A stretch of 63,943 bases of DNA, counting the filler, from Octopus bimaculoides (lineage: Eukaryota), in the NCBI RefSeq assembly GCF_001194135.2. It is 7 parts of 7 records of this genome, joined end to end, with 100 filler letters (N's around TTAATTAATTAA, not from the genome) between each part and the next. Parts side by side here need not be neighbours in the genome. Positions count along the whole stretch, not along the records: positions 29,388 to 50,275 come from NC_068989.1; 6 more parts are not named here. One strand, 5' to 3'. The notes beneath the pieces were generated by a model that did no database searches, had not been told where the DNA came from, and saw nothing but the letters and a program-made list of their open reading frames with translations. The translations under genes were made by a program, and so were the position numbers. Of this stretch, positions 46,856 to 47,272 are shown piece after piece. Position 1 is the first letter of the stretch; each line of letters opens with the position of its first letter.

Positions 46856-47272
46856 CTATTGCTGTTCAAGGGAATTATGGGCTGTCATAATGTTAGTAGA
46901 TTGTTGTAGCGAAGTAGGGTTGGGTAGAATGAAGTCAGAAGGTGAAACCCAAGCAGATGCTGCTTGCTGCTGGCGAACGGGTTGTTGAGGTGAGCCCTGA
47001 CAAGTTGCCAGGGTATTAAGTAATACACTACATTTATTGACCAGCATAGATTTTACTTTTTCCACGTGTGTGTGTACGATATAGAATTGCCTCATGATTT
47101 CTTTGATTTTATTTTCAACTTGGTTATTTCTCCTGTAAAAAGATTGTGAAGCTAATTTTTCAGCGATTTTACTGTAAATACTGGCTGTCGTACCGTGGTA
47201 ATAATAACTGTGCCGAGTGCTTATTAGAACATTAATTTCATTTTGTACCCAGTGGTGTTTCAAAAGGTACTA
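46856..47272 (-). CDS. Candidate coding exon with a Myb/SANT-like (trihelix, Myb_DNA-bind_4-like) DNA-binding domain and a Q/P/S-rich tail
   Basis: HWVQNEINVLISTR...IYSKIAEKLASQSFYRRNNQVENKIKEIMRQF fits the W..E...LI...IA..L...R...Q...K pattern. Stop-free, no ATG ahead of the domain, possible acceptor ctaac...catctag ending at 47273. Confidence 0.6.

What the first reader, a model, noticed from the sequence alone, without database searches (positions are those of the whole stretch)
46856..47272. Intact Myb/SANT-like (trihelix-type) ORF amid otherwise dead elements
Seen: 138 stop-free codons with a recognisable Myb-like helix pattern followed by a Q/P/S-rich segment, whereas almost every other coding relic here is broken; there is a possible branch point and acceptor upstream. 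Established: such domains occur in Harbinger transposon accessory proteins and in host genes domesticated from them (MSANTD type). No Harbinger DDE transposase or TIR is visible nearby. Inference: candidate lineage-specific or domesticated DNA-binding gene, or a retro/pseudo-copy of one.
Basis: partly seen in the sequence, partly recalled or inferred. Interest (0 to 1): 0.7.

Follow-up and report, generated by a model that had tools for sequence, protein, structure and literature searches.

The report
Orphan Myb/SANT-like reading frame, probably dead
The open reading frame is real and encodes a recognisable Myb/SANT-like DNA-binding domain, but it has no start codon, no partner transposase and only one, broken, relative, so it is most likely a decaying leftover of a small DNA-binding gene.

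Summary
Window 46856-47272 (minus strand) has 137 sense codons between two TAG stops. Residues 5-71 match Pfam Myb_DNA-bind_4 above its curated cut-off (33.7 vs 27 bits, E 4.9e-8), and a Q/P/S-rich tail follows. The length alone is unremarkable: a frame this long arises in 18.5% of composition-matched simulations. The profile hit is the real evidence.

The "intact gene" reading is weak:
- There is no ATG before the domain; the first in-frame ATG, codon 58, lies inside helix 3.
- The proposed acceptor has a poor pyrimidine tract.
- No gene product with this sequence is on record.
- An exhaustive search of 1.84 billion protein representatives found only two hits.

One hit is a generic fish multi-Myb protein. 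The other is a true relative on a 1.2-kb Logan contig. That copy has an ATG four codons before the point where the window's frame opens. In the standard code it also carries two in-frame TGA stops and a TAG where the window has CAG.

The two copies show past purifying selection (pN/pS 0.53). No DDE transposase, TIR, TSD or poly-A was found within about 3 kb.

Verdict: a solitary, probably non-functional copy of a Myb/SANT-like gene. Low interest.

The parts
46856..47272 (-). Stop-to-stop open frame: TAG, 137 sense codons, TAG. No ATG before codon 58.
47057..47257 (-). Myb/SANT-like domain, residues 5-71. Hallmark residues W7, E11, L15, Y32, I35, L39, R46, Q50, K54 and Y63 line up with the Myb repeats of the fish protein P0002.
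   Evidence: PF13837, 33.7 bits, E 4.9e-8; 33% identity to the P0002 repeats
46859..47005 (-). Q/P/S-rich low-complexity tail, residues ~89-137. Beyond residue ~100 it has no detectable homology to the relative.
47270..47278 (-). Site that aligns with the relative's start (L001: ATG CCT AGC TAC). The window reads ACA TCT AG-TAC, which in the ORF frame is ATC TAG TAC. The start codon is absent and a stop sits in its place.
47293..47470 (-). Non-coding 5' flank that still aligns with the relative (63% identity, z 4.8). It contains the conserved block TATCAACGATA at 47339-47349.
46761..46854 (.). (TAC)n(TAA)n microsatellite lying directly against the ORF's stop codon.
47527..47699 (-). A 139-bp retroposon (SINE-like) fragment at 47544-47682. 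It starts at a sequence resembling a tRNA B box and is flanked by a perfect 17-bp target-site duplication (47527-47543 and 47683-47699). It lies about 270 bp upstream of the ORF and is not part of the gene, but it marks a recent insertion into the ORF's 5' flank.
   Evidence: (D5)

Best explanation
The frame is the remains of a small, probably intronless gene for a Myb/SANT-like protein. The protein had a three-helix DNA-binding domain at its extreme N-terminus and a Q/P/S-rich low-complexity tail.

Proteins of this design bind DNA through the helix bundle and recruit partners through the rest of the chain. In PIF/Harbinger transposons the Myb-like protein binds the element's ends and brings in the DDE transposase. 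MSANTD, NAIF1 and the plant HDP2/ALP2 proteins are host genes derived from it.

Shown here:
- The domain is genuine.
- The family evolved under purifying selection for much of the time separating its two known copies.

Inferred:
- The window's copy has lost its start codon.
- It stands alone, without a transposase, and now drifts as a pseudogene.
- Its 137 codons are still open because it died recently or by luck.

Whether the ancestor was a transposon gene or a host gene is not resolved.
For: - Domain: Pfam PF13837 scores above its gathering cut-off, and the hallmark residues align with the Myb repeats of P0002.
- Start codon: no ATG lies ahead of the domain; the first in-frame ATG is codon 58, inside helix 3.
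- Relative's start: L001 opens with ATG four codons before the point where the window's frame opens, with a stop 24 codons upstream of that ATG. This is the usual position for this domain; P0002 starts MGANW. At the aligned site the window has no ATG and has a TAG.
- Rarity: 1.84 billion representatives scanned with full HMMER gave only 2 hits at E<=1e-3. Neither the ORF nor its neighbours are on record as gene products.
- Relative's state: in the standard code it has two in-frame TGA stops and a TAG where the window has CAG. It carries no precomputed Pfam domain.
- Past constraint: codon-position identity is 0.53/0.66/0.44. pN is 0.38 against pS 0.73, giving pN/pS 0.53 with a bootstrap 95% interval of 0.38-0.71.
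- Chance: an open frame of this length occurs in 18.5% of simulated sequences, so openness needs no selection.
- Flank: a retroposon with a perfect 17-bp TSD has inserted about 270 bp upstream.
Against: - The window copy keeps every hallmark residue of the domain and has no internal stop, while the relative has accumulated three stops over the same span. That asymmetry is what continued selection on the window copy would produce.
- An AG with a CTAAC branch-like motif sits exactly at the frame's start, so a spliced upstream ATG exon cannot be excluded.
- The ancestral position of the start rests on a single, itself broken, relative.
- Transcription and copy number in the source genome could not be examined.
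- About 180 bp of 5' flank is still alignable although synonymous sites look saturated. That hints at constraint on a regulatory region.
Confidence: 0.6

Rival explanations
1. It is a live gene. The frame would be the last (or only coding) exon of a lineage-restricted, fast-evolving Myb/SANT-like DNA-binding protein, joined by splicing at the AG of 47271-47270 to an upstream exon that supplies the ATG. It could be a domesticated transposon protein.
For: - The frame is open for 137 codons and all hallmark residues of the domain are kept.
- pN/pS is below 1 against the relative.
- An AG and a CTAAC 22 nt upstream sit at the frame's start.
- The conserved 5' flank includes the TATCAACGATA block.
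- The counterpart elsewhere is clearly more decayed.
Against: - The pyrimidine tract is weak (7/16 at -5 to -20).
- Taking the shared AG as acceptor in both sequences, the exons would start in different phases.
- The relative has an ATG directly before the domain, which argues for an unspliced ancestor.
- The 3 kb upstream (up to the end of the piece) holds no Pfam-detectable coding sequence on that strand.
- No such product is on record.
- The selection signal is historical and cannot be assigned to this lineage.
Confidence: 0.2
2. It is the accessory Myb-like gene of a PIF/Harbinger (or similar) DNA transposon, and the rest of the element has been deleted or eroded beyond recognition.
For: - Harbinger elements encode a SANT/Myb/trihelix protein next to a DDE transposase, and both are needed for transposition (PMC9392472, read).
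- The domain is at the N-terminus of a short protein, as in such accessory proteins.
- Homology to the relative covers a compact unit of about 500 bp that includes non-coding 5' sequence, as a mobile unit would.
Against: - No DDE_Tnp_4 or any other transposase domain was found in six frames of 44400-50275.
- No inverted repeats bracket the unit.
- There is no second copy in the 20.9-kb piece.
- In the other organism the copy assembled as one identical contig in three runs, so it is not obviously high-copy there.
Confidence: 0.25
3. It is a processed retrocopy of a host Myb/SANT-like mRNA, and the (TAA)n array is what remains of its poly-A tail.
For: - There is no intron within the domain.
- An A-rich microsatellite lies immediately 3' of the frame.
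- LINE and SINE activity is evident nearby.
Against: - The microsatellite abuts the stop codon and leaves no 3' UTR.
- No target-site duplication brackets the unit; the best shared word is 8 nt.
- About 180 bp upstream of the coding part is shared with the relative, and that copy shows no tail.
Confidence: 0.08
4. It is a chance open frame with a spurious profile match.
For: A frame of this length is not rare in this AT-rich sequence (18.5% of simulations).
Against: - The Pfam E-value is 4.9e-8 and the score is above the curated cut-off.
- An independent homologue matches over the same frame, with z 13.5 at the DNA level and E 1.7e-7 against 1.84 billion proteins.
- Divergence depends on codon position.
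Confidence: 0.02

Closest known systems
Myb_DNA-bind_4 (PF13837) domain proteins: plant GT/trihelix factors and animal ZSCAN20/29 and MSANTD1/2 (family membership of these examples from my own knowledge). The nearest actual sequence is the multi-Myb protein cluster of P0002, which includes Clupea harengus LOC105896288.
   Same: - One helix-bundle domain with the pattern W..E...L ... Y..I...L ... R...Q...K...Y.
- The score is above Pfam's threshold.
- 31-33% identity to each repeat of P0002.
   Different: - The loop between helices 1 and 2 is six residues shorter than in P0002's repeats.
- There is a single domain rather than five tandem repeats.
- It is so divergent that only two of 1.84 billion representatives reach E<=1e-3.
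Myb-like accessory protein of PIF/Harbinger transposons
   Same: A short protein built around a SANT/Myb/trihelix DNA-binding motif. In the transposon this protein binds the element's ends and imports or recruits the transposase (PMC9392472).
   Different: No neighbouring DDE transposase, no TIRs, and no evidence of multiple copies.
Host genes domesticated from Harbinger Myb-like proteins: MSANTD1-4 and NAIF1 in vertebrates, HDP2 in Arabidopsis, and insect co-domesticated pairs
   Same: A Myb-like domain standing alone in the genome without its transposon, with evidence of past purifying selection (PMC9392472, PMC5339849 and PMC9710019 listed).
   Different: Those genes have intact frames with start codons, orthologues conserved over long periods, and expression. 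Here the start is missing, the only relative is broken, and expression is unknown.
MSANTD2P1-type pseudogenes of Myb/SANT-like genes
   Same: A copy of a Myb/SANT-like gene that has lost coding capacity. PMC9392472 describes MSANTD2P1 as an intronless processed pseudogene.
   Different: No parent gene is known, and no poly-A or TSD hallmark of processing was found.

Membership tests
Myb_DNA-bind_4 (PF13837) domain | Score against the family profile at or above the curated gathering cut-off | tested here: met
   33.7 bits against a cut-off of 27, E 4.9e-8, profile positions 2-75 of 89. Scanned within the whole frame it scores 28.4 bits.
Myb_DNA-bind_4 (PF13837) domain | Three-helix bundle with conserved bulky aromatic or hydrophobic residues | tested here: inconclusive
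   Sequence positions W7, Y32, I35, F62 and Y63 align with P0002's repeats. The AlphaFold2 model from a 2-sequence alignment was poor (mean pLDDT 54.7). It showed helix 6-17 followed by one long helix 26-91.
PIF/Harbinger transposon (Myb-like accessory gene) | Adjacent DDE (DDE_Tnp_4-type) transposase gene | tested here: not met
   The six-frame Pfam scan of 44400-50275 found only Myb_DNA-bind_4.
PIF/Harbinger transposon (Myb-like accessory gene) | Terminal inverted repeats and a short target-site duplication around the unit | tested here: not met
   No inverted repeat brackets the ORF within 45000-47980. The only pairs found are 16-nt chance-level ones elsewhere.
PIF/Harbinger transposon (Myb-like accessory gene) | Multiple dispersed copies in the genome | not testable with these tools
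   Only 20.9 kb of the source genome is available, and it holds no second copy.
Domesticated Myb-like host gene (MSANTD/NAIF1 type) | Complete translatable frame with a start codon | tested here: not met
   There is no ATG before codon 58. A TAG sits at the site where the relative has its start region.
Domesticated Myb-like host gene (MSANTD/NAIF1 type) | Orthologues kept intact under purifying selection | tested here: inconclusive
   pN/pS is 0.53 (0.38-0.71) against the only relative, but that relative has three stops and its species is unknown.
Domesticated Myb-like host gene (MSANTD/NAIF1 type) | Transcription or translation of the locus | not testable with these tools
   No expression data are available. 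No product is on record.
Processed retrocopy | Poly-A tail and flanking target-site duplication | tested here: not met
   (TAC)n(TAA)n abuts the stop codon. No direct repeat longer than 8 nt brackets the unit.

The most novel reading that the evidence does not exclude
The frame is the coding exon of a living, lineage-restricted Myb/SANT-like DNA-binding gene. It would be a very divergent domesticated descendant of a transposon accessory protein, kept in this species while its counterpart in another organism decayed, and expressed through an upstream exon or promoter that includes the conserved TATCAACGATA block.
Probability: 0.15. Interest if true: 0.35.

Novelty: new member of a known kind. 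Interest (0 to 1): 0.15.

Why it matters
If it were alive, it would be one more case of a transposon-type DNA-binding domain recruited as a host regulator, in a lineage where such genes are barely described. Its extreme divergence would make it a new subfamily of the Myb_DNA-bind_4 domain.

As the evidence stands it is an ordinary genomic fossil. Its use is mainly for annotation. It shows that a profile-positive open frame can lack a start codon and have no intact relative, and should not be called a gene on those grounds alone.

Tried and rejected
- **Word-indexed protein searches.** Searches with the ORF, with the relative P0001 and with a LINE-like neighbour found nothing beyond P0001 itself. 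The source organism was therefore not identified. My guess of a cephalopod mollusc rests only on the look of the sequence and is unverified.
- **Literature search for the runs.** Searching for SRR11869385/91/94 and for strings from the SINE led nowhere.
- **Scans of other collections.** Metagenome and viral contigs searched with the two-sequence profile gave pattern matches but no true relatives.
- **Exact look-ups.** The ORF product (TTG-start and ATG58-start forms) and two neighbouring ORFs are not on record.
- **Structure prediction.** The model had low confidence (pLDDT 54.7), so no fold search was run.
- **PDB sequence search.** It returned only GCN4-type coiled-coil look-alikes of the ENKIKEI stretch, at weak scores (best E 8.7e-4, 22.6 bits). 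I rejected these as chance matches.
- **Rfam.** Only sub-threshold microRNA look-alikes on microsatellites were found.
- **A longer ancestral frame.** The same frame is open for 63 codons upstream, but a second frame is open there too, so this is an effect of the CA-rich composition, and the relative has many stops there. It is also open for 101 codons past the 3' TAG; 31 of these are microsatellite, there is no Pfam hit and no homology. I did not adopt this idea.
- **Reassigned stop codon.** The TGA-as-Trp translation of P0001 is an artefact of how that contig's gene was called. It is not evidence about the organism.

Full report
**What is there.** On the minus strand, 47272-46856 reads TAG, then 137 sense codons, then TAG. 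The translation starts YLLKHHWVQNEINVLI. It has the spacing W..E...L, IYSKIAEKL and R...QVENKIKEIMRQFY, followed by a segment rich in Q, P and S.

Myb_DNA-bind_4 (PF13837) matches residues 5-71 with 33.7 bits against a curated cut-off of 27, E 4.9e-8. No other family came close. The hit survives when the whole reading frame of 44400-50275 is scanned as one string.

Frame length by itself proves nothing. 18.5% of composition-matched simulations of the piece contain a stop-free run at least this long. The piece also holds a 212-codon run and several of about 135-160 codons. The evidence that this is coding-derived sequence is the profile hit plus an independent homologue.

**Relatives.** A word-indexed search found nothing. 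A full HMMER scan of 1.84 billion cluster representatives found two proteins at E<=1e-3.

- P0002 belongs to a cluster that includes a herring protein made of five tandem Myb-like repeats. It shares only the generic domain, at 31-33% identity. This shows that Y32, I35, R46, Q50, K54 and Y63 of the window's frame are the normal residues of this sub-type.
- P0001 is a true relative, with 34% identity over residues 1-98. It sits on a 1.1-1.2-kb Logan contig recovered identically from three runs.

P0001 exists as a 'protein' only because the contig was translated with TGA as tryptophan. In the standard code the frame has two TGA stops and ends at a TAG where the window has CAG. It carries no precomputed Pfam domain. 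The one known relative is therefore itself a wreck.

**Extent and nature of the homology.**

- At the DNA level the two sequences align from about window 47470 to about 46970, at 59% identity. Blastn gives E 1e-14 over 390 nt, and a local alignment scores 517 against 178 +/- 24 for shuffles.
- The coding part is highly significant (z 13.5).
- About 180 bp of non-coding 5' flank is also significant (z 4.8, 63% identity). It includes a nearly perfect block around TATCAACGATA.
- The window's tail beyond residue ~100, and both outer flanks, show nothing.

Within the frame, identity is 0.53, 0.66 and 0.44 at codon positions 1, 2 and 3. pN is 0.38 against pS 0.73, giving a ratio of 0.53 with a bootstrap interval of 0.38-0.71. 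For much of the time separating the two copies the sequence was therefore a protein-coding gene under purifying selection. With one pair, and with synonymous sites near saturation, this cannot be assigned to either lineage or to the present.

**Why I doubt it is a working gene.**

- No ATG precedes the domain. The first in-frame ATG is codon 58, inside the third helix.
- In the relative, an ATG lies four codons before the shared Y-[IL]-L-K-H (MPSYILKH), and a stop lies 24 codons upstream of that ATG. That is the usual place for this domain; P0002 begins MGANW. At the aligned position the window has no ATG, and in the ORF's frame it reads ATC TAG TAC. The simplest reading is an unspliced ancestor whose start has been lost here.
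- The splice alternative rests on an AG and a CTAAC 22 nt upstream. The tract between them is A-rich: 7 of 16 pyrimidines at -5 to -20.
- If the shared AG were the acceptor in both sequences, the two exons would begin in different phases.
- Nothing upstream on that strand, as far as the end of the piece, has a Pfam-detectable domain.
- Neither this ORF nor its neighbours are on record as gene products.
- A retroposon fragment with a perfect 17-bp target duplication has landed about 270 bp upstream.

- Six-frame Pfam scans of 44400-50275 on both strands found only the Myb domain.
- Ten neighbouring relic frames gave no significant Pfam hit.
- No inverted repeats bracket the unit.
- There is no second copy in the piece.
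- Retrocopy hallmarks are also lacking. The (TAC)n(TAA)n array abuts the stop codon with no 3' UTR, and no flanking duplication longer than 8 nt exists.

Proteins of this design are best known as the accessory protein of PIF/Harbinger elements and as its domesticated descendants (PMC9392472; PMC9710019 and PMC5339849). A transposon origin is therefore a reasonable guess, but it was not demonstrated here.

**Points in favour of life.** The window copy has kept every hallmark residue and has no internal stop, whereas the relative acquired three stops over the same span. The 5' flank is alignable although synonymous sites look saturated. Both would fit continued constraint on this copy. I give that reading about 0.2.

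**Verdict.** The most likely account (0.6) is a solitary, recently or luckily unbroken but untranslatable copy of a small Myb/SANT-like DNA-binding gene. It is a very divergent new member of a known domain family, of low general interest unless expression and conserved orthologues turn up.

The structure prediction was uninformative. The source organism and the organism of the relative were not identified.

Noticed in passing
window 47527-47699: A 139-bp retroposon fragment (47544-47682, minus orientation). It begins at a sequence resembling a tRNA B box (GAGTTCAAATTCC) and is flanked by a perfect 17-bp target-site duplication, AAATCTGAAGATTAGTT. This looks like a young, 5'-truncated SINE insertion.
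   Followed up: partly
L001 (Logan SRR11869394 contig) 627-932: The database 'protein' P0001 exists only because TGA was read as Trp on what looks like eukaryotic DNA. In the standard code the frame has two internal stops. Such gene calls can pass off pseudogenes as proteins in large protein collections.
   Followed up: yes
window 46553-46855, minus strand: The ORF's own frame stays open for another 101 codons after the single TAG. Thirty-one of these are the poly-Thr/poly-Asn microsatellite. The remaining 70 have no Pfam hit and no homology to the relative. The other two frames of that strand carry about 3-6 stops there.
   Followed up: partly
window 47339-47349, minus strand: The block TATCAACGATA (22 of 25 bases identical to L001 over its surroundings) lies about 70 bp upstream of the frame. 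It is the best-conserved stretch of the non-coding flank and occurs only once in the window. It could be a regulatory or element-internal motif.
   Followed up: partly
window 43540-44175, minus strand: This is the longest stop-free run of the piece (212 codons). Its motifs look reverse-transcriptase-associated to me (FLDISIS...HYKHTDSHTYLNF). It has no Pfam hit and no record as a gene product.
   Followed up: partly
window 37727-37800, plus strand: Rfam's tRNA model scores 30.2 bits here, just above its gathering score of 29, while ARAGORN finds no tRNA. This is probably the tRNA-derived head of a SINE. It sits next to a 136-codon LINE-like frame at 37898-38305.
   Followed up: no
window 45677-46021 and 49785-50100, minus strand: These frames look like C-terminal ends of LINE ORF2 proteins (for example FKRELDLWLTEIPDE, and ...FERARILYDEHKRAARKR). 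Neither has a Pfam hit. They lie in the same orientation as the Myb frame.
   Followed up: no
window 46523-46563: A 16-nt inverted repeat with a 9-nt loop (TCAGGGTTAATCGAGT / ACTCATTTAACCCTGA) lies about 300 bp downstream of the frame. Its meaning is unknown.
   Followed up: no
window 29388-50275: The piece is rich in microsatellites ((GATA)n, (CA)n, (TA)n, (GA)n, (TAA)n) and has eight assembly gaps of 10-967 N. Sub-threshold Rfam microRNA hits (mir-297, mir-466 and others) all fall on these repeats and are artefacts.
   Followed up: yes
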